Assembly: GCF_030144855.1 (NCBI RefSeq) | Contig: NC_082710.1 | Location: forward strand, 151,404,001-151,468,000 | Reading direction: 5' to 3' | Source of the DNA: Hypanus sabinus | Taxonomy: Eukaryota | DNA: 64,000 nucleotides | In this document: positions 1-31,731 of the stretch, piece by piece | Layout: every line of letters begins with the position of its first letter | Numbering within the stretch: the first letter of the stretch is position 1 | Program-made: the position numbers and the translations under genes | The notes under the pieces: generated by a model | Told to the model about the DNA's origin: nothing | Seen by the model: the letters and a program-made list of their open reading frames with translations, nothing else | Database searches by the model: none

Positions 1-190
1 GTGCTCCCAATGAGTCCTCATTTGCACCAGTGAAACTTCAAGCACCTGTGCTCTATCTGCAAAATGCATGATTGCCTGGTAGGTAGCTAGTTTCATTTCT
101 ATACCCATTCCCATATGTCAATCCATACCTTCCATGATCTGCCATGATGAGACTACTCTCAGGTTGTAGGAGTAACACCTCATTTTCTCT
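1..190 (+). mobile_element. Decayed Penelope-like element 3' (GIY-YIG end) fragment
   Basis: Resembles the better-preserved in-window Penelope end at 17120-17400 (gccatgatgagactactctcaggttgtaggagtaacacctcat vs gagatgaagccacactctggctggaggaacagcaccttat). Confidence 0.5.
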
Positions 191-484
191 ATCTATGCTT
201 GCAGTTTAAGGTGCTGCTGTTGTGTAATGTAATCGATGAAACGTGCATAATTCAGAACCACCAACATTGAGTTGGCATTCAATCTAAAAGGATGGTTTGA
301 CATGATAACCCAATTACATGAAGTTTTTTTTACTCCGCAGTCTGTTCTGTGTTTGGAGGACAATAATGAGTTGTTACAGCTTTCCTTCAAATTTAAACCG
401 CTCTGCTGTTTTATTTCTGAGAACTGGTGACCACGAGTTATTCCAGAGTTATTGAACACACATCAGCTAATCATTTCTTCAAAA

Positions 485-1260
485 CTGCTGGAGATTTGGG
501 AGTAAAGTGTTGCTGCTTGGTTTGTGCAAGCTGAAGCCCTATCTCTGTGTGTGTCACCAGATAATGCTACATAGTAGATTCACTCAGGAGTTCCATGGCT
601 GTGAGAGTAGTGAGTTTACTTGAATACCAGCCTGAAATCTCGCCTTTTACAATCTTTGGGCTCATTGGACTCAAGCTTGCCAGATGCCTGGGGGATGCTC
701 AGCCTTCAGAACTAATGAACCATAAGCAGTCTCTTCTGGGAAATCACCATCCTTGCTTAATTTTTAAAGAACCGTTTATGCAGCAAATGTTTGATCAAGT
801 TCACATAGCCCCCGTTAATGCATGCACAGAGGACTATAGGGAGATGGCTAAAATGCCTGATGGTCGAAACTCATCCAGGCAGAGGTGCATGATTCCTCCT
901 CTTTTCCCTGCCTCAATAAGCCCAGTCAGCAGGACCACCAACACATGCACACCCCTGGCTGTGAAAACTCTGAGTCTGTGCTTTTGGCATGCTTGCTCTG
1001 GTATGAACTCTAGGATGTGTCAACTGCCTTGCAGCTTCAACAGTGCCAATGCATTGGGGTATCAGAGGTCTGTGAACACTATGCGTTCTAGCTGCCAGTC
1101 TCATTTACTATTCATTACAGACACCCTTTCAGGGCAATGCTTCAATATGACGCAGGTGCTCAAGTGAGTGTGCTGGCAGCATGAATGATCAATCAGAAGG
1201 CAAAGAGTGAGGAAACCTCACTGGAGACCACCAAAGGCAGCTGGATTCAGACTTTAACTT
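485..1260 (+). mobile_element. Ty3/Gypsy LTR retrotransposon gag-protease relic
   Basis: ORF 595..1167 contains LGDAQPSELMN...HHPCLIFKEPFMQQ and a Cys/His motif CFWHACSGMNSRMCQLPC. A frameshifted aspartic-protease motif follows (gac gca ggt gct caa gtg agt gtg = DAGAQVSV near 1150-1175). No LTR or RT is adjacent. Confidence 0.72.
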
Positions 1261-2575
1261 AAAGCCCTTTGTTTAGACATTTACTCTGTGACATTTGCTT
1301 TGTTCTCCTCAGCGCTGAGGCTGTGCCCTGCTCTGGGCTTCACGTCTGTGAACTTTGCAACAATTTGCCCCTGCTGTGTGATGATCTGAGGCTGAGTCTA
1401 TGAACCTGCTCCAGGCATCACACTTATGGGTTAAATTTAATTCTGAATGATGTTGATTGCTTTATTGTTTGCATGATTTGTGTGTTTCTTTCTCCCTCTG
1501 CACATTGGGTGTTGGTCCTTTTTTAAAATTGTGTTCTGTCTGGTTTTGTGTTCTGTGGCTGCCTGTAAACAGACAAATCTCAAGGTTATCTAATTTATAC
1601 ATTTTCTGATCATAAATATGCTTTCAATTTTGATATCTTATGGTCTTATTTCCACATGGACCACTCTTTTGTCTTTTCAGATTCCTTCTTCTCCAGCCCT
1701 GTACCTTTTCCATCTATCATCTCCCAGCTTCTTACTGTACTTCACTTCCACTCTCCAACCCACCTGTCTTCATCTACAACCTTTCAAGCTTAGACTCCAG
1801 CATTTTCAGTGTGCTGTTCTAGATTTTCAGCATCTGCAGAATCTCATATTTATAACCTACTGTCCTGCGTGCTTTTGCGGACCTGTAGGAAAGCAAGGCA
1901 GCAACATTGTCACATGAAGGAAATGCAAACTCCACAGAGGTAGCATTAGAGGGCAGCATTGAGCTTATGTAACTGGAGCTATAAACTAATAGCTCTACAA
2001 GCTAAAAATGTACTTCTGCTGTAGATTAAATCTCCACCATGAATAAAACATAAAAATTTTACATTTAATAATGGAAACATATTGATGTTATTCGTGGTAA
2101 TTAACCTGATAATAATTCAGTGAATATCTTATTGACATTACTTAAAAATTATATTACTACTAGATCTGAAGGTTGACAGAAATTGTGACTATGCAATAAT
2201 AATTTGCTGCAGATATGAATCTTGTTCAATATGTTCAGAGTAAATTACTATTTCAGTAAAAATTTACTAAATACATAATTAAATATCATATGATAAAAAA
2301 CAACATTATGAAAAATAATCAGTTATACAACACCATTGTCAACCAATGTCAGCTGTGGCAGAATGAATTTCACAACTTACGGTGGGAGTTATTGGTAAAT
2401 CAATTGCCCAAGTTATGTTATGTCTGACCTTCAAAATCCTCATGCACCATAGCTCGGGCATCCAACTCTGCAATTAGTTCATGCCATTTCAGATTTCCAG
2501 CATGTGTATTTTTCTTAATGTTCATTCTCATTGACCTAGAACACCCTCCAAGTTCATTCAACAGAGTAAGTTTAC

Positions 2576-2836
2576 CTGTAGTTGTGTTATGCTCCTGCAG
2601 CCATTCTGTAGCCTGTCCCTTTATGATTCCATGGATACTATGTTCAGTCATTGTATCTTTTGCCCAATAAGACTTGTCAAATGCAGACGCCATCCATCTT
2701 TGTCTTGGGACTGTCATTTCCATAGTTTTGTCATAGTACTGGATCTCACAACCATCCAGGACACCAACGACACTATACTCAGGTAGATCAGCATTCCCAA
2801 GATTCAGAGTGTAGTAATAGATCAGCGAGTGAGACA
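2576..2836 (-). CDS. MHC class I-like gene, exon encoding the alpha-1 domain (phase 1-1, 261 nt)
   Basis: Acceptor ttttgttctctctAG|TG at 2837/2836 and donor ACAG|GTAAAC at 2576/2575. Translation SHSLIYYYTLNLGNADLPEYSVVGVLDGCEIQYYDKTMEMTVPRQRWMASAFDKSYWAKDTMTEHSIHGIIKGQATEWLQEHNTTT has class I alpha-1 hallmarks: SHSL.YY.T, PE...VG..DG....YD, PRQRW, YW and a terminal N-glycosylation sequon. Confidence 0.93.
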
Positions 2837-3162
2837 CTAGAGAGAACAAAATAATAGAAATATGTTAGTGAGCGGTGACTCGAAATAGCTTAAAATAATA
2901 TATTCAGAGAATAAGACATCCCAAACTCAGCTGGGTTGGTTAATTGGCAATGGTAACCTTCCCATAGTGTGGAACTGAGTGGTGAAATTTGGGTGTAGTA
3001 GTTGGGAATAACCAGAGAAAATGAGTCATTGCAGGATATGTGCAAATGGTCAGCACAGGTTTCCATACCAATCTATTCTGATTAAGTTACATCACATTAT
3101 GCTTATGTAAAGTGAGACCTACCATTTTATTATACAATATTGATTCAATCAATTACAGTATT

Positions 3163-3432
3163 TTATTTTATTTAGCAATGCAGCATGGAGTAGGCCCTTC
3201 CAGCCATGCTGTCCCAGCAACACCAGACAAATATGATTAACCCTAAAGTAATCTCAGGATGATTTACAGTAACAAATTAACCTACCCAGTATATCATTAG
3301 GCTGTGGAGAGAAACCAGAACACCCAGGAAAACCCATACATTCCACAGGAAGGACATATAGACTTCTTATAACTGGTACTAGAATGGAACTCCAAATCAC
3401 CAGGTTGTAATAGCATTGAGCTAACGGCTACA
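3163..3432 (-). mobile_element. tRNA-derived V-SINE (HE1-like)
   Basis: The reverse complement has a tRNA-like head (tgtagccgttagctcaatgctattaca), a V-domain-like gggttttcctgggtgttctggtttctctccaca, and a CR1-like tail (gaagggcctactccatgctgcattgctaaataaaataaaa). Confidence 0.72.
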
Positions 3433-3499
3433 TTATTGAGGAGAGTGTTATCTGCCACTAACACTCTCCTCCACCTAGCAGAACATGTTTAATCTAGAC

Positions 3500-4218
3500 C
3501 AGAGGTCGGCCACCCGCGGCTCTTTCATCTCTGTGATGCGGCTCCCCGTGGTTTGTTAGTTTTTGAAATGTAATTCGAAATTTGAAGATTATGGTGATCT
3601 TGTACAATCTAAAAACTTTGTGGAGACCCCATTTCCTGGCACATCCGAACCGGCTCACAATTAGGCACTGTTCCGGCTAAGGGAGATAGCCTTCGGGGGT
3701 TTGTGAGTACGTGTCTTTTGGAGCATCCGTGCCCACAGGGACAGGTTGAGGGAGGCTTTAAAGCAAGGCTGTTTAGTTCGAATAAAGCTACCTTTGACTG
3801 CAGTGTCTTTATTTTAGCGCTGCGTGTAGCACACCGCTACAACGTGTTTTTTTATCGCTATTAATATACATCACCACTGCCAATGCCTGACACCCGCCAG
3901 TGCGTGCTTTCTTTTAATTCTTCGATCCAAGGTAGGCTAACTATGGAGTAACCTTCAACCCAACGTCTTTTTTTCGGAGTTCAAAATGTTTTTGTTGCAT
4001 GCAGCAATGTAATTTCGTTTTCTCTGCAGGAGTTCATCAATTTCATAAATGCAACACATTATAGTTTGTTTATACATAGCATAAAGGCAAAAAAAGCCAT
4101 TGTGTGCAGTGTTACTTCATTTTAAATGTCAAACAGGTTTTGTGGCTCCCAGTGTTTTCTTTTCTGTGGGAAATGGGTCCATATTGGCTCTTTCAGTGGT
4201 AAACGTTGCCGACCCCTG
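3500..4218. mobile_element. Non-autonomous hAT (Charlie/Buster-type) element, 719 bp
   Basis: TIRs CAGAGGTCGGCCAC / reverse complement CAGGGGTCGGCAAC. Perfect 8-bp TSD ATCTAGAC at 3492-3499 and 4219-4226. Confidence 0.9.
3619..3841 (+). mobile_element. Solo LTR-like insert inside the hAT element
   Basis: TGTGG...CTACA termini, AATAAA at 3781-3786, flanked by ACTT/ACGT (imperfect 4-bp TSD). Confidence 0.55.
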
Positions 4219-4439
4219 ATCTAGACAAACTTTTTTTTTATTCTTCTCATTTTATACAAACAATACCTGAAGCCATGGGCACCCACATGAGCTCCAGCCG
4301 TGCATCCTTTTTTGATAGCAACTTGGTATAGTACTTATTGCTGGCTCCACTCCCCCTTTCTTTCTCTAGTACACCAGTAACTGCATTGGTACTATCTCTG
4401 CGTGGAGCTCACCTGTTTTGTCAATTTTTCTACTAACCC

Positions 4440-6300
4440 ACTCAGTACTCAAATTCATATAGAACATTTCTGATACATTTCCCCTCCATCCAGATCATCT
4501 CAGAAGATGAACATAAAGGGAACATTTACTATAAACACATCAAATCCATCAACTACCTAGACTACACCTTCACCCACCCAGTCTCATGTAGTGATACCAT
4601 GGCTTTCTTGGTACCTCTATGTCTAATACATCTGTTCCAAGAGATGGTTTTCCATTCCAGAACTTTGGCTTCCAACTGTCTGAAATTGATGACTCCTCAG
4701 TGACATCTCCTCCATTTTCCCACACTTCTAGTGCTGCACTGCCTCCTCCCAGAGAGGCAGAATTCCTTTAACCTCATCTTTCATCATATCAGCCCCCGCA
4801 TCTAGAATATCATTCTTCATCATATCCATCCATTGCTACATTACCAGACCACCCGTCATACTTTCCCATTCTCACATCACTCTGCTTTTCACAGGGATCA
4901 CTTTCTGCATGGCCACCTGCATCATTCACCCATCCCCACCAATTCCTCCATATTCCAGCACTATTTTCCCCTACTGCAGTAAGAAATACAACTCTTGTCC
5001 CTACAACATCACGATCATCCACTGACCTGAACTGGCCTTCCTAATGAGGCAGAGATGTCTTCATTTCATGGTCCAGTACATAAACTCCACGTTCCGGTTC
5101 ACGGTCCAGTCTGTGGACTCTGGACTCCAGGTCTTCTGGCTGTCCGTTGTTTCATTTGGGCTTAATCACAGGTACCTGATTCTCATATTGGGCCTGGAAT
5201 ATATTGGCCCTGGGTTCAAGTGTGGTGGCTGGTTTGTCTTGTTAGAGTCCTTGCCTCTGTGGGGTAAGTCAGGCCGTCCTTGCTGTTGCCCTATGATGGG
5301 ATCTGTCCCTTCCTGTTCTTGCCTCCATTGGGTAAGCCAGGCCATATTTGCTGTTACCCTGAGGCTGGACTGCTCCCTTCTTTCCCTCTGAAGCCTGGCT
5401 TGAAGCCCTGCTGGCTACACATCCCTGTGTCCTCGCCTGTATTGCCATCGAGTTCAGCCGCTGGAGTGAGACCAGACCCTTGCCACGCAACAGAAGGAAC
5501 TATCTATTGTTGAGCTTGGAACTGTCTCTTTATGTCCGTGTTTATTGTCCATGTACGAGTCCCAGCCCTATGTCCTGTTCCCATGGAGGGGTCCCAGCTC
5601 TGCGTTCTGTGTTCCTGTGCTTAAGTCCAAGGCTCCGAGGAGGTTCCAGTCCATGTCCAAGTCGCAGCCTAGACCCTGTCCTGGTCTTGTCCAGGGCTAG
5701 TGTCGGTGTCCAGTTATGCATGTCTCCGCCCCTGCTTTGCTCTCCCTCGACCTAGGCTCTGCGTTCCTCCTCTCCCTTGATCAAGACCTAGTCTGAACTT
5801 CATGTCCTTGTCTAGCCCTGGAGTCCCGCATCATGCCCCACATCCAGTCCTGTTGCCTTGCCACGTTCAGTCCTCGCCTGGATCCGGAGTCTGAGCCCGA
5901 GTCAAGACTCTGGTCCCAGGTCCCTGTCCAGTCACTGGCTCAGAGTCCTTTTCCAAGCTCCTAGTTCCTCATCTGGGTCCCACTTCCCTGCTCTAGTCCT
6001 AGCCCATGCTCTGTATCCTAGTCTTGTCCAGCATTGTTCCTCCGCCACTTCGCTTGCTTTCTTGATATGCCTAGTCCTCTCCCTAGTACTTCACCATCTG
6101 TGTCTTGCATTTGGGTCCGTCCCCAACGCCCACCTTATGACACTTCCAATGTGGCCTGCTCAATGTGACCTGTGCTCTGTCCATAGTGGACACTTCAAGC
6201 TCCCATTCACAAGCCATTTCATTTCTCCTTGTATTCCCACTGGGATGCATTTGTCGTTGGCCTTCTGCACTGCCAGCATGGTGCTACGTTGAAGCTGCAG
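4440..6300 (+). mobile_element. Decayed Penelope-like element interrupted by a solo LTR
   Basis: 4440-5063 and 6143-6300 are collinear with the Penelope RT/GIY-YIG copy at 16440-17400, e.g. aactacctagactacaccttcacccacccagtctcatgta vs agctaccttgactattcctcttcccaccctgtcacttgta. Confidence 0.62.
5064..6142. mobile_element. Solo LTR-like insert, ~1.08 kb
   Basis: Termini T(T)TCAT...ATGACA (TGTCAT inverted repeat with one change), flanked by CTTCA/CTTCC. It splits a Penelope fragment and is rich in short ccaagtc/cctag-type repeats. Confidence 0.62.
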
Positions 6301-6317
6301 GATTGGAAGCTCTTAAA

Positions 6318-9300
6318 ATACCATAAGACATAGGAGGAGAGTAAGACCATTTGTACCATTGGGTCTGTTCCACCATTTCATTCTAGCTGATCCATTTCCC
6401 TCCCAGACCCAATCTCCTGTCTTTTCGCGATACCCACCTATGCCCTGACTAAACAAAAGCCTATCAACTTCATAAGTATCTCCAATAACTTGGCCTGCAC
6501 AATCGCCTATGGCAATGAATTCCAGAGATTCATCAGTCTCAGAAGAATTTAATTGATCTTCCTTTGCAACTGCTCCAATATCAGTGCATCCTTTCATAGA
6601 TATAAGGTCCAAAACTGCTCACAATACTCCACCTGAGGCCTCACCAGTGTGTTATAAAGCTTCAATATTACCTTCTTACTTTTATCTTCTCAAAATAAAT
6701 GCTAACATCACATTTGCCATCCTGACTACCGACTCAACCTGCAAATTAAGCTTTGTTGAACCCTAATTGAAGACCCAAAAATCCCTTTGCACCTCAGATT
6801 TCTTTTAATTTTTGCTCTGTTTAGTAAATAGTCAATGCTTTTATTTCTTCCCCCAAAGTTCATGACTATGCACTTCCCCGCACTGGATTGTATTTGCCAT
6901 CTCTTTGCCCATTTTCTTAATCTTTAAGTCTGTCTGTAGCCTCCATTCTTCCTCAAAACAACCTGCCCCTCCACCAATGTTCATATCATCAGCAAATCTA
7001 GTCTCAAAGCCATCAATTCTGTCATCCAAACCATTGACGTATCACATAGAAAAACAGTCTCAAAACAGACTAGACACTGGTAGCCAACCTAAAATGGTTT
7101 TCATTATCCCCACTCTTTGCCTGTTGCCAAGCAGGCAATGCTCTGTCTATGCTGATATCTTTCATACAATACCATGGATTTGTTAAAAGCCTCATGTGTG
7201 GCACCTTGTCAAAGGCATGCTGAACAATCCAAGCACCCTGAAGGGAACCATATTGACTGTGGCTCACAAAGTACCCCAAAACCACATCCTTAACAATCAA
7301 CTTCAACATATTCCCATCCACTGACGTCTGACTAACTGACCTATAATTTTATTTCTTCTATCCCTCTCCCTTCTTGAAGAGTGAAGTGACATTTGTAATT
7401 TTCCAGTCATCCAAATGCAAGCCAGAATCTGCAAATTCTTAAAGGATCATTACTGATATCTCCACAATCTCTGCAGCCACTTCTTACACTACACTAGTGT
7501 GTAGTCCATATGGTACAAGTAATTTATCTACCTTCAGACTTTTCAATTACCAACTTCACACACTTCTGCTCCCTGACACTTTCAACCTTCCACCATAGAT
7601 CTAGTATATTCCACAGAAAAGACTTATGCAAAATACTTGTTCAGTTCATCAACCATTTCTGTGCACCCTCCCCCATTACTACCTCCCCAGCACCATTTCA
7701 AGCAGTCTGATATCTACTCTTTCATCTCTTTTATACTTAGTACATCTGAAGCAGCTTTTGGTATCCCCTAGCATTATTGGTTAGCTTGTTCTCCATTGTT
7801 CCTTCTTAATAACATTTTAATTGTCTTCTGTTGGTTTTAAAAGCTGCCCAGTCCTCTAACTTTCCATTATTTTTTGTTCTATAATATGCAATATCTTTGA
7901 CTTTTTTCATATTTGATTTAATTTATCTTGCCAGCCACTGTTGCATCATCCTGCCTTAGGTATATCTCCTGCACCTTCTGAAGTGCTCCTGGAAATTCCA
8001 GCCATTGCTTCTCTGCCATCATACCTGCTTCCTTACAATCAATTTTGGCAAGCTCTTTTCATCTTTCTGTAATTCACTTTACTCCACTGTAATACTGATA
8101 CATCTGTCTTTAGCTCTCCTTCTCTAGTTGCAGAATGAATTCTATCATACTATTATCACTGGCCCTAAAGTTTTGCTTTACCTTAAGCTCTCTAAACAAT
8201 TCTGGTTCATTGCACAACCCCAATCCAGAATAGCAGATCCTTGAGTGAGCTCAACCATGAGCTGCTCTAAAAAACACTGCATAGGAATTGTACAAATTCC
8301 CCACTTGAGATCCAGCACCAACCCATTTTTACCCGCAATTTCTCTGCATAAGGAGATACCCCATAATTATCGCAACATTGCCCTTTTAACATGCATTTTG
8401 AATCTCTCATTGTAATTCGTAGGTCACATATTTGCTGCTGTTTGGAGGTCTGTATATATCTCCCATCAGGGTCATTTTAACCTTGCAGTTTCTTTGCTCT
8501 GCCTACAATGATTCTACACCTTCTGATCCTATGTCACCTCATTCTAATGATTTTATTTATTTATTTGTTTATTTTTATTTTTTTAAATGAACAGAACTAC
8601 CCAAACCCCCTCTATCTACTTGTCTGTCGTTTTGATATGCTGTGCATGCTTGGATGTTACGCTCCCAGCTATAATCTTTCAGGCATGACTCAGCGATGCC
8701 CAGACTTCATAACGTCAACCTCTAACTGTGTTACAATTTCATCTGCTTTATTCCATAAAACTGTGTGCATTCAAATACAACACCTTTAGTTCTGTATTCA
8801 CACTTTTCGGATTTTCTCTGTCAATTACAATGGAATTCATCCCATTCACTGAAAACTTTGCCCTAACATCAGCCTCCCTTTGCTTGCAGATTCACTACAC
8901 ACAACCTCTAATTGCAAACCAGATACCCCATCCTCAGCACAATCACTCAGGTTCCCATCCTCCTATCAAATTAGCTCAAACTCTCCTGAAGAGGTCCAGC
9001 AAACCTGCCCACAAGAATATTGATTCCTCCTTAGGATTCAGGTATAATTCATCCCTTGTGTACAGTTGGTACCTTCCCCAGAGGAGATCCCAATGATCCA
9101 TAAATCTGACACCCCTGCCCCCTGCACTAGATCCTAAGCCACACATTCAGCAGCTGAACCATCCTATTCTTGCACTCACTAATGCGTGGCCCAGTCAGCA
9201 GTCCAGAGATTACTATCCAGGAGGTCCTGTTTTACAATGTTTTACCTAAAATAATTTTCCTAAAGTTCTTTTCAGGACCTCCATACATTTCCTATCCTTG

Positions 9301-9960
9301 CAATTAGTGCAAATATGTACCAAGACTTCTGGCTGCTCACCAACCCCCCCCCCCCCCACCCCCACTCCTTCAGAATGCCATGGACCCGAGCTGAGACATC
9401 TCTGCCCCTGACAGCTGGGAGGTAACATGCCATCCAGGTGTCTCTGTCGCTCCCACAGAATCTCATCTCTGTTTCTCTGACTATAGAATCTCCTATCACC
9501 ACTGCAGTCCTCTTCACATCTGTTCTCTTCTGAACCACAGTGCCAGTGGTAAGTGCTGTAGATGCAATTGCTGCACTTACCCCCAGTAGGTCATCCTTTT
9601 AAAAGTATCCAAAGTGGTATACTTAATATTGAGGGAAACAACACAGAGATGCTCCACACTGGCAGCCCATTCACATTCGTTCTCATGACAGTCACCCAAT
9701 TACATGCCTCCTTCAATCCAGGGGTGACTGCCTCTCATTAGTTCCCATCTATCACTTCATCAGTCTCCTGTATGAGCCAAAGTTCACCGATCTGCACCTC
9801 AGGTTTGCTTAACACATTCTCTGAAGAGATGCAGCTCGGTGCACCGAATGCAGATGTGATTATCTGAGAGGGTAGAGGTTTTCCAGAATTTGCACACCTC
9901 ATCCAGAAAACAAAACATTTCCCTTGAGTCATTCTCACTGCACTATCTGTTGCCTAGGAG
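6318..9960 (-). mobile_element. Near full-length decayed CR1 LINE
   Basis: 3' tail ccataagacatagg. RT relics in ORFs 6841..7029 and 7070..7321 (AFDKVPHMRLL). ORF1 SGNH esterase relic AVVIGDSIVR at 9272..9538 and an N-terminal Cys/coiled-coil relic at 9738..9938. Confidence 0.85.
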
Positions 9961-11915
9961 TAATGGAATGAAAAAATAAAGTGGCTCAAGACTGATCTTG
10001 CCTAAGCCTGCTAAGCACTCCACTGCTGGCTCACTCACTCAATGCACCATATTTACCTGTCTTATTTTTATTCATTATTTCTAATTAATCCACTTCATTG
10101 ATTGGGTGCAGTCCAACTCTCTCCTATGTAGTCTACAACCCAATGTTACAAAACAGGGAATATACCAGATCCCAGCAAACTGCATCCTGTGATCTGTTTT
10201 CCCCTCTTCTGCTTGACCTAGGTCTTCTCAACACTATTCCTTCCAAATTACCTCACTAGCTGTCTGCCACCCAGATCCTTTCTCCTTTCTGAACTGCTCC
10301 CATCTGCCCAACATCCTTCCTTTATCTTGTGCCACTCATGAGCTTCTTTTATCAGAATTCATAATTTGCAGCCTGCTGTTGTTTGCACATCACCTGCCAG
10401 TCTGAAACTACCTCAACCTTTCCTATCCCACCTATCTGTACTGGCCCCTTCCCTGGATCTGCCTATCACTTTACAGATCCTGTCTCACCCTCCCCTTTTC
10501 TTATTCTTAATGGCTGTCTCTTGTCAAAACCCTCAGTTCCACTGCAAAATATAGATCATAAGATGGGAATTGATCAAGACTAGAGCAGAGTGCACATTGG
10601 TGTCTGACACTGTCTGCCTGTATTTGACCAGTCTTTCTCTCCCTTTGGCTAGCTGCTGTCAGAGGAAGGCACCAGAACCTTGGGCTCCATGATGCAAGGA
10701 TTGATCAGCAAGACTTGTGGCCATGGACTCATCTTGGGGGATTTTGAGGTTCATGTTGCGTGCATTTCTGGATCCTGATTACACTCTTGATATATTTCAG
10801 TAGTTTGATTGGGGCAGTCAGAGCAGACAAGGGTACCTCAGTGAATTCTGGCTCTACAGCCTACAGTCAGCTAGCAACAGAGAACTGGACTTAATCGAAT
10901 AAATTGAATACTCATAGTTTGATGTTGAGATTCTAGGAGTTGCTCGATCCCTTTTTGCTATTTGTATAAATAGTTCTTTTATTCATTCATTGGATGTATC
11001 ATGTTTTCTTTGAAAAAATTCCATGGTGTTTCTTTGTTTTGCAGCTGCTGCGGGAGGATGAATCTCAGAGGTGTATTCAGTATACATACCTAGATAATGA
11101 GTATACATTGATTCTTTGAAATTGACAAAAGCATCCTCCCTTGAGAGATGCTGTCTGATGCACTATCTTTCTATAGTAACAAACAAGAGAAAAATCTGCA
11201 GAAGTTGGAAAAGCTTACATTTTTTTCACGAATCATCTTCCCAGCTCTTTCCATTGTTTCAGCTTGCTCCTGCCCCACCAAATACATTTCTGCATACCTC
11301 GACACTGATTTATACCCCCTTGTTCAATCCTTTCCCACCCATGTTCATGACACTTCCCATGCTCTAGATTTTTTCAATTATTTCAAGTTCCTTGGTCCCC
11401 ATCATATTTTCTCCATGGACGTTCAGTCCTAATATACATTCATCCCCCACCAGGAAGGTCTCAAAACTCTGCATTTATTTTTTGGATTTCAGACTCGACC
11501 AGTTCCCCTTAATAATTTCTCCTTCGGCTCCTCCCACTTTCTTCAAACTAAAGGTGTAGCCATGTGCACCCATATGGGTCCCAGCTATGCCTCCCTTTTT
11601 GTTGGCAATATGGAACTTCCCATGTTCCATATCCATCCCCTACTTTTCCTTCATTAAATTGATTACCACATTTGGCACTGCTCCCTGCACGCATGCTGAG
11701 CTCATTGACTTCTGCAACTTTGCCTCCAGCTTCCACCCTGCCCTCAAATTTACCTGGTCCATTTAGACAATAGACAATAGGCAATAGGTGCAGAAGTAGA
11801 CCATTCGGCCCCTCGAGTCTGCACCGCCATTCTGAGATCATGGCTGATCATTCACTATCAATACCCAGTCCCTGCCTTGTCCCCATATCCCTTGATTCCC
11901 CTATCCATCAGATAT

Positions 11916-24499: not shown

Positions 24500-24790
24500 C
24501 ACCTTCCTTTTACTTGACCTTGCTAGTGATTGGGGTACAATAATTTGACTTTCAAAGTATTTCATCACAGCAGATGCGGGTGCCACTGTGTGACAGTTAT
24601 TGAGGAAACTCAATCTGCTCTTCTTGGGCACAGGTATGATTGTTGCAGTTTTGAAGCAGATGGGAACTTCTGACTGCAGCAGTGAGAAATTGAAGATGTC
24701 CTTGAACAAACTTGCCAGTTGGTTGGCAGAGGATTTTAGCACCCTTACAAGCATCCCACCAGGACCTTACACCTCTTGAAAGATGTTCTG
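24500..24790 (-). mobile_element. Rex1/Babar-like LINE RT fragment
   Basis: ORF 24479..24754: QLASLFKDIFNFSLLQSEVPICFKTATIIPVPKK...VMKYFE. Confidence 0.8.
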
Positions 24791-24936
24791 AAGTTGGCCT
24801 CCAAGACACAGACCACATGCTCAATAGATGCTACATGGATTCAGAGAGGTGTAGTTTTGGAATCCCTTTCAAAATTTTATACTTCCTTTCAAAGCCATTC
24901 ATGATGTTAGGTTTTACCTTGTAGGAAGTTTCATTT

Positions 24937-25238
24937 GTGGTGGCATTCGTCAGTCTCGAGAGACCATGGATCTGCGCCTGGAGTTTCCAGGGTGCAGGCT
25001 TGGGCAGGGTTGTGTGGGAGACCGGCAGTTGCCCAAGCTGCAGGCCTCTCCACGCCACCGATGTTGTCCAAGGGAAGGGCACTAGGACCCATGCAGCTTG
25101 GCACCAGTGATGTCACAGAGCAATGTGTTGTTAAGTGCCTTGCTCAAGGACACAAACACGCTCCCTCAGCTGAGGCTCGAACCAGTGACCTTCAGGTTAC
25201 TAGACTGATGCCTTGCCCACTAGGCCATGCGCCAACAC
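24937..25238 (-). mobile_element. tRNA-derived CORE-type SINE with 11-bp TSD
   Basis: Reverse complement: A box TGGCCTAGTGG, B box GGTTCGAGCC, CORE-like GTGTCCTTGAGCAAGGCACTTAAC. TSD AAGTTTCATTT (24926-24936) / AAGTCTCATTT (25239-25249). Confidence 0.85.
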
Positions 25239-25639
25239 AAGTCTCATTTACTGCCCATTTAATGCTGAAACAGAGTCATGGAAGCAGAACATTCTGCTCA
25301 CTGTGTCCATGGCAACCATGAAGCACCCAGTTTTACACTAATCCAAACTTAACCCATTTTTATTCTCCCTACATTCCAACATTTCCCTCCAGATTCTACC
25401 ACATATATCATAACCAGTCAATTTACTGTGACCAATTAAACTACCAACTTACATGTACCTTGGAAGTAAAATAAGGAAGAGCATATTGAGGAAGAACATT
25501 TAAGTTTCAAATAGATTGCCTGGTGATCAATTGAGTTAGACATGAACAGGCAATTATGCAGGTTGTGCCTCTGTTAATGTTTGATGACAATTATGCCAGC
25601 ATCATTCGATCCCCCTTACCCTGTAGAACCTTATTACCA

Positions 25640-26195
25640 ATAAGATAAGACTGTAAGAATGAGGACTACAATTGTGTCACTCAGCCCATCAAGTTTGCTC
25701 CATATTCAATGATATGAACATTATCTTTCTTTCTGCTAGCCATGCCCACTGTAACCCTTATAGATCAAGAAATTATTAAATTCTGCCTTGAATACACCCA
25801 GACATTTAACATCAACTACTCTGAGGCAATGAATTCCACGGATCTGTCAATCTGGCTGAAGTAAATCCTCTTCATCTCAGCATCTAATGTCTTCTATTTA
25901 TTCTAAGGCTGTCCACCCAGATCATAAATTCTCCTAATAATGGCCAAATTTTCTCCAGTTGTACCCTACCCAGGCCTTTCAGTATTTAGTGGCTTTCAGT
26001 GAGGACCCCACCCCCCACCTCATCCTTCTGAACTGCATTGAGTACAGACTCAGAAATATCAAGTGTTCCTCATATGTTGAGGCTTTCTTTCCTGGGACAA
26101 TTCTTGTGAACTTTATCTGGACCCTTTCCAGGGCTAACATATCTTTCATTAGATACAGGGCCAAAAATTATTCAGAATATTCCACATACAGTTAT
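25640..26195 (-). mobile_element. CR1 3' fragment
   Basis: ORF 25979..26164: ALERVQIKFTRIVPG...LYSMQFRRMR, a typical CR1 ORF2 C-terminus. Confidence 0.7.
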
Positions 26196-26479
26196 CCTGT
26201 TACATTTACTCCTTTTCTACTTAAAAAGTCAGTACAATCAGATTTTAGGTTTAAAATCTCTAGTGTCATGGTAGTCCTCCCTGTGTTGACCAAAGTATTC
26301 AATCAACCTCTATCAGCTCTGACTTCCTGATTCTCCAGAATTTACATCCTTTGTTCAGATCTAGAAAGTTGAATGACATCCTCTAATCCTTCCTTTAAGT
26401 TACTTCTTAAAATACTCATTTAGTTACATGTTATAATATTGCATTTAAAATTAGGGTAGATGAAACTTCATCAATTGTT

Positions 26480-27075
26480 CAGAAATAGGGGGAGCAGCTT
26501 CAATTTCCTGGGTTCAAATATCTCTGAAGATCTATCCTGGGCCCTAGCATATTGATGCAATTACAAGGAAATTACATTAGGAGCTTGAGGAAAATGGGTA
26601 GGTCACCAAAGACATTTGCAGATTTCCACAGGTACACCATGGAGAGCATTCTATATGGATGCATCACTGTCTGGTAAGGAGGCACCATACCACAGGAGCA
26701 GGAAAAGCTGCATACAGAACTCTGCCATCTCCATCATGGGTACTAACCTCCCTAGTATTGAGGACACCTTCAGAAAGGTGGCATCTGTCATTAAGAACCC
26801 ACATCACCCAGGACATAGCCTCTTATCAATGTGACATCAGCAAAATGGTACTGGAGCCTAAAGACATGGACTCAACATTTCAGGAACAGCTTCTTCCACT
26901 CCACTCTCAAATTTCTGATTAGTTGATAGACCTATGAACATTTCTTGCACTGTTCCTCTCTTTTTGCACTGCTTAACTTATTGTACTACTTTTTGTAATT
27001 TATTGCTCTATTATTATGTATTGCAATGTTCTTCTGCCACAAAGCAAGAAATTTTAAGACATCTGTTTGATATTT
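26480..27075 (+). mobile_element. Rex1/Babar-like LINE 3' fragment
   Basis: FKFLG...LSW-type relic, IIK.PHHPGHSL motif (ORF 26616..26834) and AT-rich 3' UTR. Confidence 0.6.
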
Positions 27076-28239
27076 TAAACTTGATTCTGATTTTTTTCAC
27101 AATATGAAGTAAAATTGTGTATGCTAACAGTCTCAAAAGCTCTTTAACTTAACTTCATTAACAGAATTGCAATAACTATGTTACTGTTTACTTCCCCCAA
27201 ATTAGATTGTCAAGGAGAATATAATTGTTTCATACATAGCTGTCACTTCTGGCATCAATACTGAATTTTATTGCCAAGTTTATTGAACTTATCCTGTACC
27301 TTGGGTTTGTCTTGTAGAGTATCTGCCATACAAACATAACATGAGCAGGATGATATCATTTCACTCTGTTCTTGTTTACCATTCTATAAGATCATAGCTA
27401 ATCTTTGCAACACTTTTATATCTAATCCAAGTCTCCAACTTTTTCTAAAGCTGCATCGATCATTGTATTGAGTAATTGAATGATAAGAGCTCCCCTCAAA
27501 TTCCTGGGAGAACACATCACTCACAACTTTTCATAGTCCCAGAATGCATCCTGCACAGTCAAGACAGCTCACTAATGCCTCAAATTTCTGAGTAGGCTGA
27601 ATAGAGATAGACTTTGCACAGACATGCTCAGCATTCTACAGATATGCAATAGAGAATATCTTAACAGGCTGCATCACTGCATGGTATGGAAACTAAATGG
27701 CATCAGACAGAAAGGCAATGTGATCTGTAATCAATACTTCCAAATGAATCACTGGCAGTAGCCTACCAAAGGTCATGTATGCAGAAAGGTGTCAGAAAGT
27801 GGCCAGTAACAACATAAAAGATACCACAAATGCTGTTCATGGACTGTTCATCCTGTTGTTATCAGGAATGATTGTTGGGTTTTATCAGATTGAGGGTAAC
27901 AATTATTTCATTCTCCTTATACTTGTGTACAAGAAATAACATAAAACAATATTGAATCTTATACCTTGCATCAGTTAGAGATTGGCAATTGTGAAATTGT
28001 GAGCATCACTGAGCCTTAGCTGAGAGAACATTATATTTAGGAGCTCAGTATTCAAGGATACATTTATACAGAGAGAACAGGCAGTTAAGCATGATGGTAT
28101 GGGTTGGCTTAGTTAAGTAAGAAATTAAATCAAGTCCTTAGCAAGCGGTAATAGAAGATCAGAAAATGCAGAATACTTCTGGTGAGAGTTAATATAGGAT
28201 GAAAGACCATGATGCAAATTATATACAGACATCTGAATG

Positions 28240-29900
28240 TTGGCTAGGATGTGGAATATAAATTACAATGCAAGAAGGAAAAGGCATGTAATAAGGGCAA
28301 TGTTATCAAAGTCATGGGGGATTTCAATATGCAGGCGGATTGAGAAATTCAGGTTGCTACTGGATCCCAAGAGAGGGAACTTGTAGAATGCCAAAAAGAT
28401 GACTTTTTAGCTTGTTTTGACCCACTTGGGGAAATGCAATTTTGGATCAGGTGTTGTGTAATTAGCCAGATTTGATTAGGGAGTTTAAGGTAAAGGAACT
28501 CAAAGGAGTAGTGATTATAATATTATAGAATTCACCCTGCAGGTTCAGAGGGAGAAAATGAGGTCAGATATATTAGTATTGCAGTGGAATAATAGGAATT
28601 ATAGAAAAGAAATGAGAGGAAGGAAACTGGAGTTTCTGGGGACAAGGTACAGGATAGACACAAACCAAAGATGAATAATAAGTATTATAAAGGGGGGGAT
28701 GAGGCTCATAAGAGAAGACAAAGAGTGCATATAATATTGTAAAAGTCACTGGGAAGTGAGAGGATTGGGAAATTTAAAAACAGAAAGCAATTGGAAAGCC
28801 GTAAAGAGAAAAAGATTGAATATGAATGGAAGCTGGCTAATAATATAAAGATACAAAACATTTTTTTTCAGATATATAAAGAGTAAAAGATAGGTATGTG
28901 GACAATGAACCATTGGAAATTAATGCTGAAGGGATAGTAGAATGAAATAGTGGATGAAAATAATCAGTATTTTGCAACAGGTTCACTGTGGAATACACCA
29001 ATGGTATGTCAGAAAATCGAGTGCCGGGGGCATAAGTGAGTTTTAGTTCCTATTAATATGGAGATGCTGCTAAGGAAGTTGAAAGGTCTGAAAGTGGATA
29101 AGTCACCAGATAGAGTATATCACAGGGTTCAGAAACGGATAAATGAAGAGATTATGGAGATACCAATGATCTTTCAAGAATCACTAGATTCTGGAATGGT
29201 TCCTGAGCACTTAAAATTGCAACTGTCACTCCACTCTCAGAAGGGAGGGAGCAGTAGACAGGAATTAAAAGCTCAGTTATCCTGACTTCAGTGGTTAAAA
29301 AGATGTTGAAGTCTATTATTAAGGATGAAGTTTCACGGTACTGGGAGGCACATGATAAAATAGGCCAAAGTCAACATGGTTTTCGAAAGGGAACTTTTTA
29401 ATGAGGAGAAACCCAATCAAGGTAGACAAAGAATCAACTTGGATTTTCTGAAGGCATTTGACAAGGTGCCACATATGAGGTTGCTTAACATGAGTCCATG
29501 GTATTACATGAAAGATACTGACATGTATAGAAAAGTGGCTGGCTGGCAGGAGGCAAAAAGTGGAAATAATAGGTTCCTATTCTGGTTAGCTGCGAGTGAC
29601 TTGTGTGTATTGTGAGTGATTATTTTCATGTATTATTTCAATGATTTGGTTGATGCAATTTTACAGCTTTGTGGCTGTTCGCAGATGGCATAGCGATAAA
29701 TAAGGGGGAATATAGTGTTGTTGAAGTGAGGAGCCTGCAGAAATGCTTAGACAGACTGGGAGAATGTGCAAAGAAATGGAAGATGGAATATAGAGAATTG
29801 TTGCTTCCAATCTAGCAACAGAGACTAAGGGAAGATCTGATAGATGTTTATACAATTATGAGAGGCGTAGACAGAGAGACCAACTGATAAACTTTTTCCA
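28240..29900 (+). mobile_element. Heavily decayed CR1 (endonuclease to RT)
   Basis: VMGDFN relic at ~28310. ORFs 29058..29285 (LKGLKVDKSPD) and 29376..29615 (DFLKAFDKVPHMRLL). Confidence 0.72.
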
Positions 29901-30667
29901 GTGTCAAGCTTTCTAATGTTGCCCCCCAACACCACACGATAAGCCATTTCTGTATGTTCCAGAGCACACAAAATGAATGCCAACATTGCATTTGTCTTCC
30001 CTACAACTGATGAAACCTTTTGGGAATTCTGCACAGCAACTTCCAAATCATTATGCTCTTCTGATTTTTTAAATTTTCTAGCCATTTTCTAGTTTTCTAG
30101 TCTATGCTTTTATTCGTTCTACCAAAGCATAAATCCTTCTAACAAAGTACACCCCCCAAGATTCACCTATCGTCTGACATTCCTCATTCCTCACACCATT
30201 CAAATTTACTCAGTTTTTTTCTTCTTCCAGTGCTTCAAAAGGGTTTCATCCTGAAACTTTGACTGCACTTTTTTTTCTGATAGATGCTGCCTGGCCTGCT
30301 GTGTTCCTCCATCATATTGTGTGTGTTGATCAGATTTCAAGCGTCCACAGACTTTTTCTTGAAAATAATTGAGTTTATTTGAAGTGGAGCTGGATAGGTT
30401 CTTCATTAGTCAGAGCTTCAAAGCACAAGGCAAGTTGGGAGAAGAACATGTTTGAGAGGGAGAATAAATTGGCATGGTGGAACATCAGTGCCCTAATTCT
30501 GCCCCTATGTCTTATGGCCTTTTTTAACTTCTGTTGCTTTTTTGTTGTTTCCAAAGCAGCAGCAGAAACTGAGGGAAGATCTGACAGATATTTCTATAAT
30601 AATGAGATGTATAGACAGAGAGGGCAGTTGATAACCTTTTCCCACGGTCATGCTGTTTAATATTGAC

Positions 30668-30703
30668 ACCCCCCCCCCAAACACACACACACACACACAC
30701 ACA
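30668..30703. repeat. Poly-C run plus (CA)n microsatellite
   Basis: Seen directly. Confidence 0.9.
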
Positions 30704-31550
30704 AAATAGACCCTCTGTCATGCATCTCCTTTAAAATTACCTTCTCTCATACAGCTAAATAGAAAGGAAAGTTGTGCGGGGAGCAGGATGTTATTTTTAA
30801 AGAGAATGGAGGGTGTCTGAAATTTGTTGTCAGGATAGCAGTTGATGTAGAAATAATACAAGTATTTAAAACTCTACTGAATAGGCATATTAATTACATA
30901 GAACGGAGGAATATAGACCATATTCTGGACAAATGTATTAGATCTCTTCTATTTAATTACTTCCTCACAACATTTCAGGGCAAAGGGCTTGATCCTGCAC
31001 TACACTGAATTATGTTTAAATGCTCATGACTGATCTATTACTCTCTTCTAAGAAGAGAAAATCTGCAGATGCTGGAAACCCAAGCAGCACACACAAAATG
31101 CTAAAGGGACTCAGCAGACCAGGCGACATCTATGGAAAAGATGTTTCAGGCCAAAATCTATCTGGGAAGTAGTTGTAAGTTAGAGATTTCACTTCTCTTT
31201 CTGATAACATTTTGCCAACAAACATCGTTCTGTAAGTGATGAAGATGCAAGGTACGGCTTTCCGACTCTTTCACGTTGTATCCCCATTTTAATGAATAGA
31301 AATTAACATTGAGCGCAGTTTATGTTTCAGTCTTACGCTCCGGTAAAATGATGCCTAATGAAACCCGAAATGTTGTAAAACCAAAACAGGAGCTCCATTC
31401 TGGTGATAGATCAGTCTTAAGAGATTAAACACTACACTTACACAAACCTGAGCGCACTTTGCAGAGCACAAGCGGTTTGGACTACGAGCTCACTTCTGTT
31501 CAGTGGTGGCACTTCATTCAGTATAAATAAAACTAGTAAAGTGTACTTAC

Positions 31551-31602
31551 TGGATAGAACCACTTGCAAGTGGAAGAAACCCAGGACCACGCACAGGAAC
31601 AT
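31551..31602 (-). CDS. Leader (signal peptide) exon, most plausibly exon 1 of the MHC class I-like gene
   Basis: ATG at 31602, hydrophobic MFLCVVLGFFHLQVVLS, phase-1 consensus donor A|GTAAGT at 31551/31550. Joins in frame to the phase-1 alpha-1 exon (A+TG = Met, then SHSLIYY). An X-Y box lies immediately upstream. Confidence 0.75.
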
Positions 31603-31688: not shown

Positions 31689-31731
31689 CCAATCAGAATG
31701 TAACTATAGTGTTTCGTCATCAGCCTCTAGG
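31689..31731 (-). promoter_or_regulatory. MHC-type X1/X2-Y promoter module
   Basis: Minus strand CCTAGAGGCTGATG (X1-like) overlapping TGACG (X2/CRE half-site), then 21 nt, then CTGATTGG (Y box, inverted CCAAT), 87 nt before the ATG. No convincing S box was seen. Confidence 0.68.

What the first reader, a model, noticed from the sequence alone, without database searches (positions are those of the whole stretch)
2576..2836. Divergent, probably non-classical MHC class I alpha-1 domain with Glu84 and an extra Cys
Seen: an intact exon with no stops in an otherwise decayed landscape. Aligned by hand to HLA numbering (gap-free from W60 to N86), it keeps Y7, Y59, W60, acidic 63 and the N86-T-T sequon. 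It has E84, V27, W81 and a Cys at 31. Established: classical class I molecules use Y7/Y59 for the peptide N-terminus and R84 (non-mammals) or Y84 (mammals) for the C-terminal carboxylate, and alpha-1 normally has no Cys; sharks and rays have several non-classical lineages (UBA-UEA and others). Inference: an A-pocket-like end is retained but the F-pocket end is charge-reversed, suggesting an unusual ligand or open groove end. The free Cys could form an inter-chain bond. I cannot assign the lineage, so it may be known or new.
Basis: partly seen in the sequence, partly recalled or inferred. Interest (0 to 1): 0.75.

Follow-up and report, generated by a model that had tools for sequence, protein, structure and literature searches.

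The report
Stingray UGA class I alpha-1 exon
This is a real, intact exon of an already annotated Atlantic stingray immune gene of the known shark-and-ray "UGA" family of non-classical MHC class I molecules, which has a solved structure and reportedly binds lipids, so it is correct but not new.

Summary
Window 2576-2836 (minus strand) is a 261-nt phase-1 exon with a good AG acceptor and GT donor, encoding an MHC class I alpha-1 domain.

It matches residues 19-104 of XP_059826626.1 at 100% identity. That is a 334-aa Hypanus sabinus RefSeq protein with leader, alpha-1, alpha-2, alpha-3, transmembrane and tail. The leader exon is also in the window (31551-31602), behind a 28.7-kb intron. The other exons lie beyond position 1.

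The gene falls in a fully supported clade found in sharks, skates, sawfish, mantas and stingrays. That clade includes the close orthologue of PDB 9CH4, titled "shark nonclassical MHC class I, UGA". So the lineage is known, with a structure, and a review reports it as CD1-like and lipid-binding.

- **Residue calls:** all are correct (Y7, V27, C31, Y59, W60, D63, W81, E84, N86-T-T).
- **E84:** this sits at a variable position (E/Q/K/R across UGA, Q in the nearest relatives), so it is not a lineage trait.
- **Lineage-wide losses:** residue 143 is hydrophobic and residue 159 is Leu.
- **Cys31:** present in 17 of 19 members. Its bonding state was not testable here.
- **Expression:** contigs from four related species end exactly at the exon borders, which indicates splicing.

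The scan had earlier noted the neighbouring gene as lying "beside UGA". Novelty is low.

The parts
2576..2836 (-). Exon 2 (alpha-1 domain) of the Hypanus sabinus UGA gene. It is 261 nt, phase 1 at both ends, with AG acceptor at 2838-2837 and GT donor at 2575-2574.
   Evidence: Sequence read. 100% identity to residues 19-104 of XP_059826626.1. E = 2.4e-37 to PDB 9CH4. Contigs of four related species end exactly at these borders.
31551..31602 (-). Coding part of exon 1 (leader peptide). ATG is at 31602-31600. The last base, A at 31551, joins TG of exon 2 to give Met18. The GT donor is at 31550-31549.
   Evidence: Exact 8-mer peptide matches to residues 1-17 of P0179; sequence read; tblastn hit.
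2837..31550 (-). Intron 1, 28,714 bp, rich in repeats.
   Evidence: It follows from the two exon positions. No other class I exon is found by tblastn. The gene span on record is 68.8 kb.
1..2575 (-). Start of intron 2. The alpha-2, alpha-3, TM and tail exons lie beyond the window start.
   Evidence: No tblastn hit to residues 105-334 of P0179 anywhere in the window. The gene range of 68,784 bp is longer than the roughly 29 kb held here.
31689..31731 (-). Putative X-box / Y-box (CTGATTGG) promoter module, about 90-130 bp upstream of this gene's ATG.
Evidence: Function not tested.

Best explanation
The exon encodes the alpha-1 half of the ligand-binding platform of the Atlantic stingray (Hypanus sabinus) orthologue of UGA. 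UGA is a single- or low-copy, MHC-linked, non-classical class I (class Ib) lineage of sharks and rays.

**Shown here**
- The exon is spliced between a leader exon 28.7 kb upstream and alpha-2, alpha-3, TM and tail exons downstream. The product is a 334-aa type I membrane protein with the class I domain order.
- It is an orthologue of the crystallised shark UGA.
- The groove-lining residues are almost frozen across elasmobranchs.

**Inferred**
- Like shark UGA, it pairs with beta-2-microglobulin.
- It holds a hydrophobic, probably lipid, ligand rather than a peptide pinned at both termini. The floor and walls are largely invariant and greasy (G97, F99, L114, L/F116, hydrophobic 143, M152, F156, L159, L160, L167, W81). 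The C-terminal carboxylate anchors 84 and 143, and the N-terminal anchor Y159, are gone.
- A conserved cytoplasmic Y-x-x-I/V motif suggests endosomal recycling, as in CD1, where lipid loading would occur. The complex would then be shown to a restricted T-cell or NK-type population.

E84, L13 and I143 are stingray or species-level substitutions on this conserved scaffold. Cys31 is a lineage-typical, probably unpaired, floor residue.
For: **Identity**
- 86/86 identity to XP_059826626.1.
- The full protein has MHC_I and C1-set Pfam hits and a 68.8-kb gene range in GCA_030144855.1.
- The leader exon is in the window.

**Lineage**
- P0179 matches 9CH4 at E = 1.2e-111 over residues 19-285.
- The 9CH4 title reads 'Crystal structure of shark nonclassical MHC CLASS I, UGA'.
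- Zebra shark P0172 matches 9CH4 at E = 6.7e-170, a near-identical alignment.
- P0172 shares a 19-row clade with the window gene at SH-aLRT 100. The batoid subclade has support 99 and the stingray+manta subclade 100, and the topology largely follows the shark/batoid split.

**Non-classical groove**
- Y7, Y59, K146, W147 and Y171 are kept.
- Position 84 is variable, 143 is F/I/L/M, and 159 is Leu in 19 of 19.
- Most of the 36 groove positions are invariant or nearly so across the clade.
- Alpha-1 is no more divergent than alpha-3, unlike classical genes.

**Tail**
- A Y-x-x-I/V motif is present in 12 of 19 members, including this one (YESI).

**Expression and splicing**
- Contigs of 354, 243, 1305 and 1550 nt come from four runs of four organisms, at 93-96% identity.
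- Three of them cover 2574/2576 to 2835/2836 and then continue in sequence unlike the introns. The 243-nt contig reaches only the 2834 border.

**Reported ligand**
- A review states that UFA and UGA of sharks and rays are CD1-like, and that crystal structure and mass spectrometry suggest they bind lipids like those of CD1d (PMC12562908). UFA is also mentioned in PMC10751288.
Against: - Lipid binding is second-hand. It rests on a personal communication cited in a review and on a PDB title. I could not read the primary paper or the coordinates.
- A crude count of aliphatic/aromatic residues at 36 groove positions barely separates this protein (20) from a classical-type shark sequence (18).
- By sequence the nearest solved structures after UGA are MR1 and classical class I. 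No CD1 is among the best 60.
- Five of the eight classical anchors are retained, so a peptide-like or small polar ligand end is not excluded.
- No RNA run of H. sabinus itself was laid. The runs are only guessed to be RNA, and all come from relatives.
- The AlphaFold model was poor (mean pLDDT 65.8).
Confidence: 0.85

Rival explanations
1. It is a UGA orthologue, but the ligand is not a lipid. It could be a small metabolite (as in MR1), a peptide bound mainly through its N-terminus, or nothing at all (a ligand-free recognition or transport molecule such as FcRn, HFE or ZAG).
For: The A-pocket-type residues Y7, Y59 and Y171, together with K146 and W147, are retained. MR1 chains are the best non-UGA sequence matches, at E about 1e-52. 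HFE, ZAG and MR1 follow 9CH4 in the structural ranking. The hydrophobic residue count does not discriminate.
Against: A review reports lipid binding for UGA from a crystal structure and mass spectrometry. The invariant greasy floor and the Y-x-x-hydrophobic tail fit a CD1-like route. The structural ranking comes from a low-confidence model, and all its non-UGA hits are tied at Z about 16.
Confidence: 0.12
2. It is an isolated or decaying exon (a pseudogene remnant) that is not used in this species.
For: It lies between very long repeat-filled introns. No other class I exon lies within 28 kb. No RNA run of the same species was found.
Against: The frame is intact and the splice sites are canonical. 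It is part of a complete 334-aa RefSeq model with two isoforms. It is 91% identical to the Hemitrygon orthologue, and groove residues are conserved across the clade. Relatives carry it in spliced contigs of up to 1550 nt.
Confidence: 0.02
3. It is a classical UAA-type allele with an odd residue 84, or E84 is a sequencing error.
For: Y7, Y59 and the N86 sequon look classical. E84 differs from Q84 of the nearest relatives, which one base change could explain.
Against: The tree places it far from the sequences that carry the classical signature (P0211, P0022), in a clade with support 100. T143 and Y159 are absent in all 19 members. An error at codon 84 cannot be excluded, but it would not change the lineage.
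Confidence: 0.01

Closest known systems
Shark UGA (PDB 9CH4, 'shark nonclassical MHC class I, UGA', released 2026-03-18), whose closest match here is the zebra shark orthologue
   Same: They share a 100%-supported clade. The match is E = 1.2e-111 and gap-free over the whole 267-residue ectodomain. The conserved groove residues are the same, as are Cys31, W81 and the N86 sequon.
   Different: The stingray has E84 (K in 9CH4), D63 (C in 9CH4 and several sharks), L13 for the near-invariant His, I143 for Phe, and Cys for Trp at position 168. That Cys is shared only with Hemitrygon and Mobula. The gene is spread over 68.8 kb.
The neighbouring sister lineage (H. sabinus P0196, skate XP_055486430.1), annotated 'MR1-like'
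   Same: It is the sister clade of UGA, with support 99 for the pair. In little skate, a UGA-cluster protein and the sister protein carry consecutive accessions on one 127-kb contig. It shares L159, L160, D163, M152, Y155, F156, G97 and Y171.
   Different: It matches 9CH4 only at E = 3e-51. It has H59, F7, C99 and W167, has no Cys31 in most members, and lacks the N86 sequon.
CD1 (mammals, birds, reptiles)
   Same: The reported function is the same: UGA is described as CD1-like and lipid-binding (PMC12562908). Both have a cytoplasmic Y-x-x-hydrophobic motif. The CD1 tail motifs are from my own knowledge.
   Different: They are not close in sequence: no CD1 chain is among the 60 best PDB matches. 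UGA keeps the alpha-2 disulfide and many classical-type residues. Orthology is not shown.
Classical elasmobranch class I (UAA; PDB 6LUP)
   Same: The domain order and alpha-1 length are the same. Both have Y7, Y59, K146, W147, Y171, the N86 glycan site and the C101-C164 disulfide.
   Different: R84, T143 and Y159 are lost. It forms a separate clade. Alpha-1 is not more variable than alpha-3.

Membership tests
UGA (elasmobranch non-classical class I lineage) | Groups with the reference UGA sequence (9CH4) to the exclusion of other class I lineages | tested here: met
   The 9CH4 title names UGA. P0172 matches 9CH4 at E = 6.7e-170. P0172 and the window gene share a 19-row clade with SH-aLRT 100. 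P0179 matches 9CH4 at E = 1.2e-111.
UGA (elasmobranch non-classical class I lineage) | Single- or low-copy gene in both sharks and rays | tested here: met
   The searches recovered one to three copies per species across 17 species. H. sabinus has one gene with two isoforms.
UGA (elasmobranch non-classical class I lineage) | MHC-linked, in a class Ib cluster | tested here: inconclusive
In skate the two are adjacent on one contig. I did not see MHC framework genes in this window.
UGA (elasmobranch non-classical class I lineage) | Binds lipid in the groove | not testable with these tools
   Known only from a review statement. No coordinates or primary paper were available.
Classical MHC class Ia (UAA) | Eight conserved peptide-terminus anchors: Y7, Y59, R/Y84, T143, K146, W147, Y159, Y171 | tested here: not met
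   Position 84 is E (variable in the clade), 143 is I (F/L/M in the clade) and 159 is L (19 of 19). The other five are kept.
Classical MHC class Ia (UAA) | High polymorphism concentrated in alpha-1 and alpha-2 | not tested
   No population data were available. Between species, alpha-1 is as conserved as alpha-3.
CD1 | Sequence or profile membership in the CD1 family | tested here: not met
   The best PDB sequence matches after UGA are MR1 and classical class I. No CD1 is in the best 60.
CD1 | Tyrosine-based endosomal sorting motif in the tail | tested here: met
   The H. sabinus tail has YESI. Y-x-x-I/V is present in 12 of 19 UGA members. Its function is inferred.

The most novel reading that the evidence does not exclude
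Stingrays and mantas have remodelled the N-terminal (A-pocket) end of an otherwise frozen UGA groove. Only they replace Trp168 on the alpha-2 helix with Cys, while keeping the lineage's floor Cys31. This could create a new disulfide stapling the helix end to the floor. H. sabinus adds L13, I143 and E84. Together these could change which ligand UGA holds in this group.
Probability: 0.12. Interest if true: 0.4.

Novelty: already known. Interest (0 to 1): 0.2.

Why it matters
UGA is one of two shark-and-ray class Ib lineages (with UFA) reported to be CD1-like. Those reports would push lipid presentation back to the origin of jawed vertebrates.

This finding adds only a clean genomic placement of the stingray orthologue's first two exons and promoter, and a list of stingray-specific substitutions. 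The gene is already annotated in RefSeq (as 'MR1-like'), and the lineage already has a crystal structure.

Its practical value is corrective. The exon should be labelled UGA, and residue 84 should not be read as a functional signature.

Tried and rejected
- **Pfam on the exon alone:** no family at E up to 1, because it is only half of the MHC_I model.
- **Fetching the rest of the gene as DNA:** this failed because the sample file is too large. The alpha-2 and alpha-3 exons were therefore judged from the annotated protein only.
- **RNA evidence:** no run is on record as RNA and none is at least 99% identical. The four runs laid are relatives, held as contigs, so they give no expression level, strand or same-species proof.
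- **AlphaFold model of the full protein:** it was poor (pLDDT 65.8, with alpha-1 residues 47-83 under 50). I used it only to pull PDB titles and did not interpret pockets from it.
- **Hydrophobic residue count at groove positions:** not discriminating.
- **Literature searches:** five searches for a primary UGA or 9CH4 paper found only one review sentence. PMC8454915 is not held.
- **Nonsynonymous excess among stingray alpha-1 differences:** 7 of 8, 4 of 5, 7 of 10 and 9 of 12 changed codons alter the amino acid. The numbers are too few, partly overlapping, and exclude the exon ends, so I draw no conclusion about selection.
- **Apparent terminal inverted repeat around 3493-4222:** not confirmed by the repeat finder.

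Full report
**1. Observation**

The minus strand of window 2576-2836 is a canonical internal exon. A pyrimidine tract and AG (2838-2837) precede it, and GT (2575-2574) follows it. It is 261 nt long and phase 1 at both ends, the usual layout of class I domain exons. Its 86 complete codons have no stop.

Pfam finds nothing with the exon alone. phmmer against PDB sequences gives E = 2.4e-37 to 9CH4 chain A and 1e-12 to 1e-6 to shark, fish, frog and bird class I chains. A search of 1.84 billion representatives gives three hits at about 1e-31 and 275 hits at or below 1e-3.

**2. What gene it is**

The three best representatives are skate and sawshark class I-like proteins. A full-length search with the skate protein recovered the same family in skates, sawfish, manta, red stingray and eight shark species.

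The 90% cluster of the red stingray protein contains XP_059826626.1 and XP_059826627.1 of Hypanus sabinus. The window exon is 86/86 identical to residues 19-104 of the former. So the window is Atlantic stingray DNA and the exon belongs to an annotated gene.

The 334-aa product has a leader, alpha-1, alpha-2 with the C101-C164 pair, a C1-set alpha-3, a transmembrane helix and a short tail.

The gene range on record is 68,784 bp. No DNA could be fetched for it. Within the window:
- The leader exon lies at 31551-31602 (ATG 31602-31600, donor GT 31550-31549).
- Intron 1 is therefore 28,714 bp.
- tblastn with eight class I proteins finds no other class I exon in the 64 kb. Alpha-2 and the rest lie beyond position 1.
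- The X/Y-box note of the scan (31689-31731) sits 90-130 bp upstream of this gene's ATG, so it is this gene's promoter region.

**3. Is the exon used?**

No RNA run of the same species was found. I laid Logan contigs of four runs from four different organisms on 2000-3400.

Contigs of 354, 1305 and 1550 nt cover 2574/2576 to 2835/2836 at 93-96% identity. They then continue for up to about 1200 nt in sequence unlike the flanking introns. A fourth contig of 243 nt covers 2657-2834.

Breaks exactly at both splice sites, inside contigs of mRNA length, are what spliced transcripts of orthologues look like. One of them translates like the Hemitrygon protein.

This supports exon usage in close relatives. 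It does not prove expression in H. sabinus.

**4. Lineage**

- The full protein matches 9CH4 at E = 1.2e-111 over residues 19-285 without gaps.
- A structural second look returned the entry title 'Crystal structure of shark nonclassical MHC CLASS I, UGA', released 2026-03-18. The AlphaFold model used for this was poor (pLDDT 65.8), so I use only the title and the top rank.
- The zebra shark family member P0172 matches 9CH4 at E = 6.7e-170, in a near-identical alignment.

I built a maximum-likelihood tree of 59 elasmobranch and chimaera class I proteins:
- The window gene, P0172 and 17 others form a clade with SH-aLRT 100.
- Inside it the batoids (99) and the stingray+manta group (100) are recovered, so the broad topology follows the shark/batoid split.
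- The sister clade (pair support 99) is the lineage of the neighbouring stingray gene P0196. That lineage matches 9CH4 only at E = 3e-51.
- Sequences with the classical signature (P0211, P0022) and a large clade lacking Cys101 lie elsewhere.

**5. Groove and other residues**

Against the eight classical peptide-terminus anchors, UGA differs as follows:
- Kept: Y7 (Y17/F2), Y59, K146, W147 and Y171.
- Replaced: position 143 by a hydrophobic residue (F12, L3, M2, I1, S1; Ile here).
- Replaced: Y159 by Leu in 19 of 19.
- Unfixed: position 84 (Q8, K6, E3, R2).

E84 is therefore a local change. Hemitrygon and both Mobula species have Q84. Lineage-wide features are W81 (18 of 19), G97, F99, L114, L/F116, M152, Y155, F156, L159, L160, D163 and L167.

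Such near-invariance over the whole of Elasmobranchii, with alpha-1 no more divergent than alpha-3, is the pattern of a monomorphic class Ib molecule with one kind of ligand. A crude hydrophobic count (20 of 36 positions against 18 in a classical-type sequence) does not by itself prove a lipid groove.

Cys31 is present in 17 of 19 members. It is Tyr in one sawfish paralogue and Ser in whale shark. No second extra Cys is conserved across the clade: Cys63 occurs in five sharks, and Cys168 only in stingrays and mantas, replacing Trp. An obligatory disulfide or inter-chain bond is thus unlikely, but this was not tested.

The tail carries Y-x-x-I/V in 12 of 19 members (YESI here). From general knowledge this resembles the endosomal sorting motif of CD1b, CD1c and CD1d.

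**6. Function**

[quoted passage not shown] It adds that crystal structure and mass spectrometry suggest they bind lipids like those of CD1d, citing a personal communication (PMC12562908). UFA is called CD1-like in PMC10751288. I found no primary UGA paper in the library.

The most likely mechanism is a beta-2-microglobulin-associated, endosome-recycling presenter of a hydrophobic ligand. This is inferred by orthology and by the residue pattern. It is not shown for the stingray protein.

By sequence UGA is not a CD1 family member. MR1 and classical class I chains are its nearest solved relatives after 9CH4.

**7. Verdict**

The 'non-classical' reading is right. The emphasis on E84 is not supported, and the lineage is known and has a structure. 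The gene is already annotated, though named 'MR1-like'.

The scan had earlier described the adjacent gene as lying 'beside UGA' (s1-146640). This report identifies the UGA gene itself.

What remains mildly interesting is the stingray/manta Trp168-to-Cys change next to the retained Cys31, and the H. sabinus-specific L13, I143 and E84.

Noticed in passing
window 31689-31731 (-): X-box-like (CCTAGAGGCTGATGACG) and Y-box (CTGATTGG) motifs lie 90-130 bp upstream of the UGA start codon. This means the scan's separate 'class II-like X-Y box' note concerns this same gene's promoter. In mammals, SXY modules are shared by class I and class II promoters (from general knowledge).
   Followed up: partly
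window 3159-3360: Short stretches (about 3160-3207, 3250-3291 and 3300-3356) match dozens of unrelated contigs in all four related-species runs at 85-95% identity. This suggests a widespread transcribed interspersed repeat (SINE-like) in intron 1.
   Followed up: no
window 3493-4222: By eye, imperfect terminal inverted repeats (about 18 of 22 bases) flank a stretch of roughly 730 bp, like a small non-autonomous DNA transposon. The repeat finder with a 9-base seed reported none.
   Followed up: partly
P0179 residue 182 (HLA-type position 168), outside the window: Trp168 of the UGA alpha-2 helix is Cys only in Hypanus, Hemitrygon and Mobula. Several sharks instead have an extra Cys at position 63.
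   Followed up: partly
window 2799-2801 (codon for residue 13 of alpha-1): H. sabinus has Leu where the other 18 clade members and all four related-species contigs have His. It is either a species-specific substitution or an allele.
   Followed up: partly
Related proteins P0178 (Hemitrygon) and P0171, P0174 (Pristis): These extra UGA copies in red stingray and sawfish have lost the tail Y-x-x-I/V motif. One (P0174) has also lost Y59, W60 and Y171. This suggests duplicates that are diverging or decaying.
   Followed up: no
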